Shown here one piece after another: positions 1,596 to 1,798 of a stretch of DNA of 64,000 nucleotides (positions within the stretch are counted from its first letter, which is position 1; each line of letters begins with the position of its first letter). Both the position numbers and the translations under genes were made by a program. This DNA is from Podarcis muralis (Eukaryota). The stretch is from positions 50,344,001-50,408,000 of the forward strand of contig NC_135661.1 in the NCBI RefSeq assembly GCF_964188315.1, written 5' to 3'. The notes below the pieces were generated by a model, which was not told the DNA's origin, ran no database searches, and was given only the letters and a program-made list of their open reading frames with translations.

Positions 1596-1798
1596 ACAGA
1601 TAGGTAGCCGTGTTGGTCTGCCATAGTCAAAACAAAAAAAATTCCTTCCAGTAGCACCTTAAAGACCAACTAAGTTAGTTCTTGGTATGAGCTTTCGTGT
1701 GTATCTGAAGAAGTGTGCATGCACACGAAAGCTCATACCAAGAACTAACTTAGTTGGTCTTTAAGGTGCTACTGGAAGGAATTTTTTTTGTTTTGACT
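1596..1798 (+). mobile_element. Penelope-like element remnant made of inverted pseudo-LTRs, with 13-bp TSD
   Basis: TSD ttgactgccaaat at 1583-1595 and 1799-1811. Perfect 77-bp inverted arms at 1625-1701 and 1722-1798. Contains squamate PLE terminal motifs (ggtagccgtgttggtctg; gtctttaaggtgctactgga) and a hammerhead core. Confidence 0.85.
1701..1738 (+). ncRNA. Minimal type-I hammerhead ribozyme (PLE-associated, palindromic stem III)
   Basis: GUAU-CUGAAGA-A-GUGUG(CAUG)CACAC-GAAA-GC-UC^AUAC. Stem I is 4 bp (1701-1704/1735-1738), core CUGANGA is at 1705-1711, stem II is 5 bp, GAAA is at 1727-1730, stem III is the AGCU palindrome, and predicted cleavage is after C1734. Confidence 0.85.

What the first reader, a model, noticed from the sequence alone, without database searches (positions are those of the whole stretch)
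1701..1738. Intact minimal hammerhead ribozyme in a lizard Penelope-like remnant
Seen: GUAU CUGAAGA A GUGUG CAUG CACAC GAAA GC UC AUAC, which has every catalytic-core nucleotide, a 4-bp stem I, a 5-bp stem II and a loopless palindromic stem III (AGCU). Established: PLEs carry minimal type-I hammerheads with palindromic stem III that cleave as dimers (Cervera and De la Pena 2014; Lunse et al. 2017), and an extra A after A9 is tolerated, as in the ChCMVd hammerhead. Inference: this copy could still self-cleave after C1734 if transcribed on the + strand, for example inside a host intron.
Basis: partly seen in the sequence, partly recalled or inferred. Interest (0 to 1): 0.85.

Follow-up and report, generated by a model that had tools for sequence, protein, structure and literature searches.

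The report
Penelope hammerhead motif inside fold-back insert
The 38-base hammerhead-ribozyme motif is really there, but it is one consensus copy of a very abundant Penelope-type retroelement repeat, sitting alone in a 203-bp fold-back insertion whose RNA would lock it into a long hairpin, with no sign of cutting in RNA data, so it is an ordinary example of an already described kind.

Summary
Observation confirmed. [quoted passage not shown] No Rfam hammerhead model reports it.

The motif lies at the centre of a 203-bp insertion (1596-1798) with a 13-bp target-site duplication, nested in a Tc1/mariner-type MITE. The insertion is two opposed 5'-truncated copies, perfectly complementary over 77 bp. 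Only one carries a 29-nt "tail". This is the published PLE insertion anatomy.

The claim that this copy could still cleave is weak:
- The opposed copy is truncated inside its hammerhead, so no dimer partner exists.
- The + strand RNA folds into a -147 kcal/mol hairpin, and the ribozyme fold costs +31 kcal/mol.
- Reads of two RNA-seq runs show no pile-up of ends at 1734/1735 and almost no locus-specific reads.
- Those reads show strand-specific A>G changes absent from DNA, an ADAR-type signature of dsRNA.

The family is very high-copy and young, so stems I and II show no variation and no covariation test is possible within it. The validated Anolis Poseidon_Ac hammerhead shares the architecture with compensatory helix differences.

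The scan already holds 90 notes on such motifs in this genome. Known kind, low interest.

The parts
1701..1738 (+). Minimal type-I hammerhead motif: stem I 1701-1704/1735-1738, core CUGAAGA 1705-1711, extra A 1712, stem II 1713-1717/1722-1726, loop CAUG, GAAA 1727-1730, palindromic AGCU helix III 1730-1733, predicted cut after C1734
1699..1798 (+). Sense arm. It is a complete short unit of the repeat family (hammerhead plus 60 nt ending in T8-GTTTTGACT) and lacks the tail. The family's usual 5' boundary lies at 1699-1701.
1596..1701 (-). Opposed (antisense) arm. It is the same unit 5'-truncated inside the hammerhead, ending at the equivalent of 1722, so it has no CUGANGA box. It carries the tail.
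1596..1624 (-). 29-nt tail. Its sense reading begins ATGGCAGACCAACACGG. It is present at this end only and is identical to the continuation seen in most transcribed family copies.
   Evidence: table 7 (loose ends behind 1798, agreement 0.87-0.91)
1625..1798 (.). Perfect 77-bp inverted repeat (1625-1701 against 1722-1798) around a 20-nt centre. As RNA it forms a hairpin of -147 kcal/mol. The arms share a 3-nt junction microhomology, GTG, at 1699-1701.
1583..1595 (.). Target-site duplication, left copy (TTGACTGCCAAAT)
1799..1811 (.). Target-site duplication, right copy (13/13 identical). Contigs of MITE paralogues begin to align exactly at 1799.
   Evidence: table 8 records 8 and 16
1557..2010 (.). 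Host element. It is a Tc1/mariner-type MITE with CAGTGGAA... terminal inverted repeats flanked by TA, and it was interrupted by the insertion.
   Evidence: (I2)

Best explanation
The motif is the pseudo-LTR hammerhead of a very high-copy, young Penelope-like (PLE) repeat family. It arrived here as part of one dead-on-arrival insertion of 203 bp (1596-1798).

Shown: the insertion consists of two opposed copies of the same ~100-nt 3' unit. They are 77/77 identical, flanked by a 13-bp target-site duplication, with a 29-nt tail on one side only.

Inferred: both strands of a staggered break primed reverse transcription of the element RNA. One started at the tail-less RT start site and the other at the tail-containing site. 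The two cDNAs were then joined in the middle at a GTG microhomology. This matches the in vitro behaviour of the Anolis PLE protein PAc, which cleaves and extends both DNA strands, uses two adjacent internal RT start sites, and uses mostly uncleaved RNA as template.

In an active element the hammerhead would act in tandem transcripts as a dimer or with protein assistance. In this copy it is a passenger with no partner. In any + strand transcript its 3' half (stem II 3' strand, GAAA, helix III, the cut site and stem I 3' strand) is base-paired to the opposed arm. The expected RNA product is therefore a long hairpin, which is an ADAR substrate, and not a cleaved RNA.
For: Anatomy: searches give the arms, tail, target-site duplication and microhomology.

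Literature anatomy: PMC8557442 describes an inverted 5'-truncated copy adjacent to the element and a 30-40-bp tail, often at one end only. PMC11167929 reports that both strands are cleaved and extended, that there are two RT start sites bounding the tail, that hammerhead cleavage is not needed for insertion, that cleavage occurs only with protein, and that no RNA-seq reads end at the cut site.

Motif hallmarks: PMC4209133 lists the extra nucleotide between 9 and 10.1, the G10.1-C11.1 pair, palindromic 15.2-16.2, a 4-5-bp helix I, an inactive monomer, and dual motifs on opposite strands 100-700 bp apart.

Poseidon_Ac consensus: its tandem junction has the same architecture (CUGAGGA, extra U, 6-bp helix II, GAAA, palindromic ACGU, UC). 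It differs from this motif on both sides at helix I pairs 2.2-1.2 and 2.3-1.3, helix II pairs 10.2-11.2 and 10.3-11.3, and pair 15.2-16.2.

Family data: 6,892 DNA contig pieces were laid, about 30% of them at least 99% alike. Summed word depth is about 1.4 million over 1720-1775 against 300-17,000 in the flanks. Tail and tail-less 3' ends are both present, and flanks are AT-rich and heterogeneous.

Folding: -147.1 kcal/mol hairpin, z -23.7. The ribozyme-competent fold is +31 kcal/mol, equilibrium fraction about 1e-22. The left arm captures 1722-1726 from a nascent-chain end of 1734 onward.

RNA: table 6 lists no place where molecules begin or end. Depth is flat across 1727-1740. Strand-specific A>G occurs at 1730, 1737, 1741, 1744, 1752, 1763 and 1764, and T>C at 1736, 1746, 1750 and 1762, at 10-45% in the RNA direction that shows them. 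In DNA depth they are generally about 0.3% or less.
Against: No RT/GIY-YIG ORF was linked to this repeat. None lies in the window, and the rest of the genome could not be searched, so the PLE origin rests on anatomy and motif type. Rfam hammerhead models do not score the motif. The RNA evidence is at family level: reads from thousands of copies pile on this stretch, so it says little about this locus. The end-detection threshold, a fifth of local depth, would miss a low cleaved fraction. Standard libraries also lose a 34-nt 5' product. Equilibrium folding ignores kinetics and proteins, and the PAc hammerhead is protein-assisted. The double-priming origin of the fold-back is inferred, not shown. 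Snap-back synthesis at the palindromic helix II would give a similar product.
Confidence: 0.8

Rival explanations
1. This copy is a still-functional ribozyme that cleaves + strand transcripts, for example a host intron, after C1734, acting as a dimer with another copy in trans.
For: All core nucleotides and both helices are intact, and the copy matches the family majority at every listed hammerhead position. About 12% of family copies have lost G12 (G1727A) but this one has not. A lizard PLE hammerhead of the same architecture does cleave when its protein is present (PMC11167929). The family is transcribed in both directions, so trans partners exist in the cell.
Against: There is no cis partner. 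The 3' half is sequestered in a perfect 77-bp duplex, which costs +31 kcal/mol to open. No read-end pile-up is seen at 1734/1735 at family level, and there are about 0-2 locus-specific reads. Monomer min-HHRs are inactive and dimers weak in vitro (PMC4209133). A-to-I changes, including one at A15.1 (1730), show that + sense family RNA is double-stranded in vivo.
Confidence: 0.06
2. The relevant feature is the hairpin, not the ribozyme. The 203-bp fold-back acts as a dsRNA source, either as an ADAR-edited element that marks or retains host transcripts or as a precursor of small RNAs against the PLE family.
For: The hairpin is -147 kcal/mol, z -23.7. Generic hairpin-type miRNA models score 53-62 bits, below their gathering scores. 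Family RNA carries a strand-specific A>G signature that is absent from DNA.
Against: Editing is a passive consequence of any long inverted repeat. Nothing shows selection or a benefit. This locus is barely transcribed in the two runs read. No small-RNA data were examined. The miRNA-model hits are all far below threshold and only reflect a long perfect stem.
Confidence: 0.1
3. The motif is a chance match to a short degenerate consensus in AT-rich repeat DNA and has nothing to do with ribozymes.
For: Rfam hammerhead models give no hit. The 38-mer's folding energy is no better than shuffles. There is no within-family covariation.
Against: 0 of 200 shuffles give a descriptor hit. The motif shows features that were not required by the core search and that are PLE hallmarks: the extra nucleotide after A9, G10.1-C11.1 and palindromic 15.2-16.2 (PMC4209133). 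It sits in a PLE-type insertion. The validated Poseidon_Ac hammerhead has the same layout with compensatory helix differences.
Confidence: 0.02

Closest known systems
Minimal hammerhead ribozymes of Penelope-like elements (Cervera and De la Pena 2014, PMC4209133; Lunse et al. 2017 as cited in PMC6765202)
   Same: Type-I topology, a full catalytic core, a 4-bp helix I, an unpaired nucleotide between A9 and G10.1, a G10.1-C11.1 pair, and a loopless palindromic helix III (AGCU). Copies are mostly dispersed single motifs in truncated elements, sometimes paired on opposite strands.
   Different: Helix II is 5 bp with a 4-nt loop, shorter than the 6-8 bp quoted for several families. Helix II and its loop together form a 14-nt perfect palindrome. 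In RNAcofold this palindrome, rather than helix III, drives dimer pairing. Activity was not tested.
PAc / Poseidon_Ac hammerhead of Anolis carolinensis (PMC11167929)
   Same: It is a lizard PLE with the same motif layout. An ATG lies inside the ribozyme (A9-U-G10.1 in PAc, loop II here). RT start sites lie roughly 60-95 nt downstream of the cut site and bound a ~30-nt tail. Copies retain the uncut hammerhead. No RNA-seq ends are found at the cut site.
   Different: It is a different family. The helix sequences, the extra nucleotide (U against A), position 7 (G against A) and the palindrome (ACGU against AGCU) all differ, and there is no sequence similarity outside the core. The element here is only a ~100-130-nt unit, and no ORF was found.
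Canonical PLE insertion architecture (Craig et al. 2021, PMC8557442)
   Same: Strong 5' truncation, an inverted 5'-truncated copy abutting the sense copy, and a 30-40-bp tail at one end only.
   Different: Both copies here are extremely short, so the whole insertion is a 203-bp hairpin without an ORF or a direct pLTR.
Non-LTR retrozymes, the tandem type-I hammerhead repeats of animals (PMC7229834; bioRxiv 10.64898/2026.07.22.740005)
   Same: They are short non-autonomous hammerhead-bearing repeats thought to derive from PLE pLTRs, and vertebrate versions need dimers.
   Different: Retrozymes are head-to-tail tandem arrays with canonical hammerheads that have loop-loop contacts, and they give circRNAs. 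This is a dispersed, inverted, minimal motif. Only rare tandem junctions were seen in the family (tables 5 and 5c).
Viroid hammerhead with an extra nucleotide after A9 (De la Pena and Flores 2001, cited in PMC4209133)
   Same: An unpaired nucleotide lies between A9 and G10.1.
   Different: That is a viroid type-III ribozyme with stable helices. The better comparison is the PLE family itself, where this nucleotide is the rule.

Membership tests
Hammerhead ribozyme, minimal type-I (PLE) variant | Conserved core C3 U4 G5 A6 N7 G8 A9 ... G12 A13 A14, an A15.1-U16.1 pair, and H17 at the cut site | tested here: met
   CTGAAGA at 1705-1711, GAA at 1727-1729, A1730/T1733, C1734
Hammerhead ribozyme, minimal type-I (PLE) variant | Helices I and II can form, with a G10.1-C11.1 closing pair | tested here: met
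   the minimum-energy fold of the 38-mer has the 4-bp helix I and the 5-bp helix II. The energy is not better than shuffles.
Hammerhead ribozyme, minimal type-I (PLE) variant | Unpaired nucleotide between A9 and G10.1, and palindromic 15.2-16.2 without a loop (PMC4209133) | tested here: met
   A1712 and AGCT at 1730-1733.
Hammerhead ribozyme, minimal type-I (PLE) variant | Helices kept through compensatory changes among related sequences | tested here: inconclusive
   Within the family, no stem position varies at 5% or more among the variants listed (13 variants were not shown). Against Poseidon_Ac, five pairs differ on both sides, but that is a two-sequence comparison made by hand.
Hammerhead ribozyme, minimal type-I (PLE) variant | Match to a curated covariance model (Rfam hammerhead families) | tested here: not met
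   Searches give no hammerhead hit even at E up to 10. It was not tested whether these models detect loopless-helix-III variants at all.
Hammerhead ribozyme, minimal type-I (PLE) variant | Site-specific self-cleavage after position 17 | tested here: inconclusive
   table 6 shows no accumulation of RNA ends at 1734/1735 at family level, with a threshold of a fifth of depth. Biochemistry cannot be done with these tools.
Penelope-like element (PLE) insertion | Hammerhead motif in the pLTR or 3' unit | tested here: met
Penelope-like element (PLE) insertion | Inverted 5'-truncated copy adjacent to the sense copy | tested here: met
   The criterion is from PMC8557442.
Penelope-like element (PLE) insertion | Optional 30-40-bp tail, often at one end only, bounded by two RT start sites | tested here: met
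   One search shows a 29-nt tail on the left arm only. table 7 shows family copies both with and without the tail.
Penelope-like element (PLE) insertion | A related autonomous element that encodes the PLE reverse transcriptase and GIY-YIG endonuclease and shares this 3' unit | not tested
   The window has no such ORF, and the rest of the genome was not searchable. Scans of the metagenome and viral collections gave 0 hits.
Non-LTR retrozyme | Head-to-tail tandem repeats of 150-450 bp, each with a canonical type-I hammerhead | tested here: not met
   Searches show a single inverted pair, no tandem copy in the window, and a minimal rather than canonical motif.

The most novel reading that the evidence does not exclude
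The ~100-130-nt unit may be more than debris of a full-length PLE. It could be a very high-copy non-autonomous retroposon whose template RNA begins exactly at stem I of the hammerhead. The family's 5' boundary lies at 1699-1701, and extended copies carry a TATA-like ATATAG about 30 nt upstream. On this reading the ribozyme is kept uncut as a structure used by the PLE protein rather than as a nuclease. The fold-back insertions of this family would then be a major natural dsRNA and ADAR substrate in this lizard. That would make them the functional counterpart of inverted Alu pairs in primates.
Probability: 0.2. Interest if true: 0.45.

Novelty: new member of a known kind. Interest (0 to 1): 0.15.

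Why it matters
It matters little as a discovery. Minimal hammerheads in PLE pseudo-LTRs have been described since 2014, one from an anole has been tested biochemically, and this scan has already flagged about 90 such motifs in the same genome.

The locus is a clean teaching example for two reasons. First, an intact-looking ribozyme motif can be structurally silenced by its own insertion architecture. Second, a genomic footprint (two opposed copies, one with and one without the tail, inside one target-site duplication) agrees with what the PAc protein does in vitro: both strands are primed, there are two RT start sites, and uncut RNA serves as the template.

The family-level A-to-I signature is the one by-product that might deserve a separate look.

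Tried and rejected
- Rfam at gathering score on the whole window, and at E up to 10 on 351-nt and 57-nt stretches, gave no hammerhead. It gave only sub-threshold generic hairpin matches (mir-559 and others), which I reject as artefacts of a long perfect stem.
- A search of the window for more copies of the motif, of the unit, or of an empty-site MITE paralogue found none. No covariation alignment could therefore be built from window data.
- Exact-pattern scans of metagenome contigs and viral contigs for the family hammerhead gave 0 hits.
- ORFs of 130 aa or more in the window scanned against Pfam gave no PLE RT or GIY-YIG domain. The only hit was a weak zf-RVT at 3712-4410.
- Lunse et al. 2017 could not be read by DOI or PMC id. 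It is cited only through the review PMC6765202.
- Earlier scan notes searched by sequence returned nothing, and searches by words returned titles only.
- I considered a transcription start at 1699-1701. It fits the TATA-like box and the genomic 5' boundary, but no pile-up of read starts was seen there, so I kept it only as the novel case.
- I considered a primer-template microhomology (TTGACT) as the origin of the right-hand RT start. I rejected it because both copies of TTGACT are present at 1793-1804.
- The host-gene or intron context was not determined.

Full report
**Observation.**
- In hammerhead numbering, helix I is 1701-1704 with 1735-1738. C3 to A9 is CTGAAGA at 1705-1711, and an unpaired A is at 1712.
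- Helix II is 1713-1717 with 1722-1726 and is closed by G10.1-C11.1. Its loop is CATG.
- G12-A14 is 1727-1729. The loopless palindrome AGCT (15.1, 15.2, 16.2, 16.1) is 1730-1733, and C17 is 1734.
- A relaxed minimal-hammerhead descriptor that I wrote finds this site alone on both strands of the 64-kb window. It finds nothing in 200 first-order Markov shuffles, so the match is not chance.
- No Rfam hammerhead model reports it, at gathering score or at E up to 10 on short stretches.
- The isolated 38-mer does fold into helices I and II, but its energy (-6.8 kcal/mol) is no better than shuffles.

**How well it fits the known kind.** Cervera and De la Pena (PMC4209133) list features that emerged in PLE minimal hammerheads without being required by their search:
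- a conserved G10.1-C11.1 pair;
- palindromic 15.2-16.2;
- a short helix I of 4-5 bp.

All are present here. The extra A is therefore a family hallmark rather than a tolerated oddity.

The Repbase consensus of Poseidon_Ac is given as a supplement of PMC11167929. Across its tandem junction it reads CUGAGGA, an extra U, a 6-bp helix II, GAAA, palindromic ACGU, then UC. My parse reproduces the paper's statements that the ORF starts at the beginning of stem II and that the cut site is 26 bp after the start codon. That ribozyme was validated by C3G, G8C and double-mutant rescue. Compared with it, the present motif keeps the core. It differs on both sides of helix I pairs 2.2-1.2 and 2.3-1.3, helix II pairs 10.2-11.2 and 10.3-11.3, and pair 15.2-16.2. 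This is covariation between families, but from only two sequences compared by hand.

**What surrounds it.** The motif is the centre of a large inverted repeat.
- Aligning the reverse complement of the left side with the right side shows 77 of 77 identical bases, 1625-1701 against 1722-1798.
- The left arm continues outward for 29 more bases (1596-1624). The right arm lacks these.
- The whole 203-bp block (1596-1798) is flanked by an exact 13-bp direct repeat, TTGACTGCCAAAT, at 1583-1595 and 1799-1811.
- The block lies inside a short element with CAGTGGAA-type terminal inverted repeats next to TA at about 1557 and 2010. This is a Tc1/mariner-type MITE.
- Contigs from paralogous MITE copies begin to align exactly at 1799 (table 8). 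That is consistent with the insertion boundary.
- The left arm stops inside its own hammerhead, at the equivalent of 1722. The minus strand therefore carries no complete motif.
- The two arms overlap in a 3-nt GTG at 1699-1701.

**This is the standard PLE insertion anatomy.** Craig et al. (PMC8557442) describe strong 5' truncation, an inverted 5'-truncated copy abutting the element, and a 30-40-bp tail often present at one end only. The in vitro study of the anole PLE protein PAc (PMC11167929) reports the following:
- The protein cleaves and extends both DNA strands.
- It starts reverse transcription at two adjacent internal sites that bound the tail.
- Hammerhead mutants do not affect insertion, and uncleaved RNA is the main template.
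- The ribozyme cleaves only when protein is present.
- No public RNA-seq reads begin or end at the cut site.

My inference is that the block arose in one event. Each 3' end of a staggered break primed a cDNA, one from the tail-less start site and one from the tail-containing site. The two cDNAs were then joined at the GTG microhomology. The identity of the arms and of the duplication points to a recent event. Snap-back synthesis at the palindromic helix II is an alternative origin that I cannot exclude.

**Family-level data.** I laid two raw RNA-seq runs (about 12% of each read), one set of DNA contigs and one set of RNA contigs, all of the same organism, on 1685-1885.
- The unit is very abundant. 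6,892 DNA contig pieces were laid, about 30% of them at least 99% alike. Summed word depth is about 1.4 million over 1720-1775, against hundreds to about 17,000 in the MITE flank.
- The usual 5' boundary of genomic copies is 1699-1701, with heterogeneous AT-rich flanks. A minority continue upstream with a shared sequence.
- 3' ends fall either near the T-run/GTTTTGAC or after the tail. The tail's sequence equals that of the left arm here.
- In the DNA, the hammerhead positions that vary at 5% or more are G1727A (G12, a CpG site, 11.6%) and C1734T (10.3%). No helix position is listed as varying. 13 lower-support variants were not shown.
- This copy carries the majority letter at every listed hammerhead position.

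**Does it cut?** Several results argue that this copy does not.
- It has no partner in cis. Single minimal PLE hammerheads showed no detectable cleavage in vitro, and dimers cleaved only weakly (PMC4209133; PMC6765202).
- A + strand transcript across the block folds into a hairpin of -147.1 kcal/mol (z -23.7). That hairpin pairs 1722-1738 with 1685-1701. The paired segment comprises the 3' strand of helix II, GAAA, helix III, the cut site and the 3' strand of helix I.
- Forcing the ribozyme-competent pairing costs 31 kcal/mol, an equilibrium fraction of about 1e-22.
- In folds of growing transcripts, the helix II hairpin is the best structure only until the chain ends at 1730. From 1734 onward the left arm holds 1722-1726.
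- In the two RNA-seq runs no position of the stretch collects starts or ends of molecules (threshold: a fifth of local depth). Depth is flat across 1727-1740.
- Genomic copies almost all retain the full motif upstream of the cut site, so their templates were uncut.
- Reads that could only come from this locus (1685-1698 joined to 1701 onward, or 1798 joined to the flank without the paralogue's variants) number about 0-2 per run.
- Nearly all RNA reads (98-99%) run on into unrelated sequence. The family is therefore mostly transcribed passively as part of other transcripts, in both directions.

**A by-product.** RNA reads show A>G at 1730, 1737, 1741, 1744, 1752, 1763 and 1764 almost only in one read direction. 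They show T>C at 1736, 1746, 1750 and 1762 almost only in the other direction.
- Frequencies are 10-45% in that direction. In DNA depth these variants are generally about 0.3% or less (table 3).
- A>G and T>C dominate the change spectrum in RNA but not in DNA (table 1).
- This is the expected signature of ADAR editing of double-stranded RNA on both transcript senses.
- It supports the view that RNA of this family is largely in duplex form in vivo. One edited site is A15.1 of the ribozyme.
- The caveat is that the DNA and RNA are not from the same individual, and the expressed copies may be a biased subset of the genomic ones.

**Dimer model.** RNAcofold of two copies of 1699-1742 predicts a homodimer 17 kcal/mol more stable than two monomers. 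It is held by the 14-nt palindrome of helix II and its loop, not by the AGCU of helix III. Whether such a swapped dimer is catalytically competent is unknown.

**Membership.**
- The motif meets every sequence criterion of the PLE minimal hammerhead. It fails only the Rfam model test. Cleavage is untested.
- The insertion meets three structural PLE criteria.
- The link to an autonomous element with RT and GIY-YIG was not tested. The window has no such ORF, the rest of the genome could not be searched, and the collection scans found nothing.

**Verdict.**
The PLE-remnant reading is supported by anatomy. The claim of residual activity for this copy is very unlikely.
- The kind is well described, including in an anole. 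Earlier notes of this scan list 90 findings with the same words in this genome, among them fold-back copies, a ~100-nt unit, and two notes on this very stretch.
- Interest is low.
- The most novel reading left open is that the short unit is a non-autonomous retroposon whose RNA starts at the ribozyme, and that its fold-backs are a major ADAR substrate in this lizard. I give that about 0.2.

Noticed in passing
window 1685-1800 (family level, table 3): Strand-specific A>G and T>C changes reach 10-45% in RNA reads in the direction that shows them. In DNA contig depth they are generally about 0.3% or less. This is an ADAR-type hyper-editing signature on both senses of the repeat family. No paper on A-to-I editing of lizard PLE repeats turned up.
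   Followed up: partly
window 1699-1701 and the upstream consensus table 7: Most genomic copies of the family begin sharply at 1699-1701, the first bases of helix I. Extended, transcribed copies share an upstream sequence with a TATA-like ATATAG about 30 nt before that point. No pile-up of RNA read starts was seen there.
   Followed up: partly
window 1557-2010: This is a Tc1/mariner-type MITE with CAGTGGAA... terminal inverted repeats next to TA, and it hosts the PLE insertion. The window holds no second full copy, only a 34-nt fragment at 8498-8531.
   Followed up: partly
window 1719-1748, + strand: The ATG in loop II of the hammerhead opens a 9-codon frame that ends at TAA 1746-1748. T1746A, carried by about 42% of family DNA depth, removes that stop. 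An earlier scan note on another piece of the genome claims that the family's ORF starts and stops inside the ribozyme. That claim was not checked here.
   Followed up: no
window 3503-3574, - strand: There is a tRNA-like match just at the Rfam gathering score (29.5 bits, E 0.043). It is probably the head of a tRNA-derived SINE rather than a gene.
   Followed up: no
window 3712-4410, + strand: A 233-aa ORF has a weak zf-RVT match (E 0.0045, below the cut-off). It is probably a remnant of a non-LTR retrotransposon and is not PLE-type.
   Followed up: no
window 1009-1068: A run of about 15 AAC repeats follows a short run of ATA repeats.
   Followed up: no
runs X33, X34, X35: Runs labelled as three other organisms (B, C, D) hold 69-100% of the sampled 31-letter words of the 203-bp block. 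Near-identical copies of the unit therefore exist in related species.
   Followed up: no
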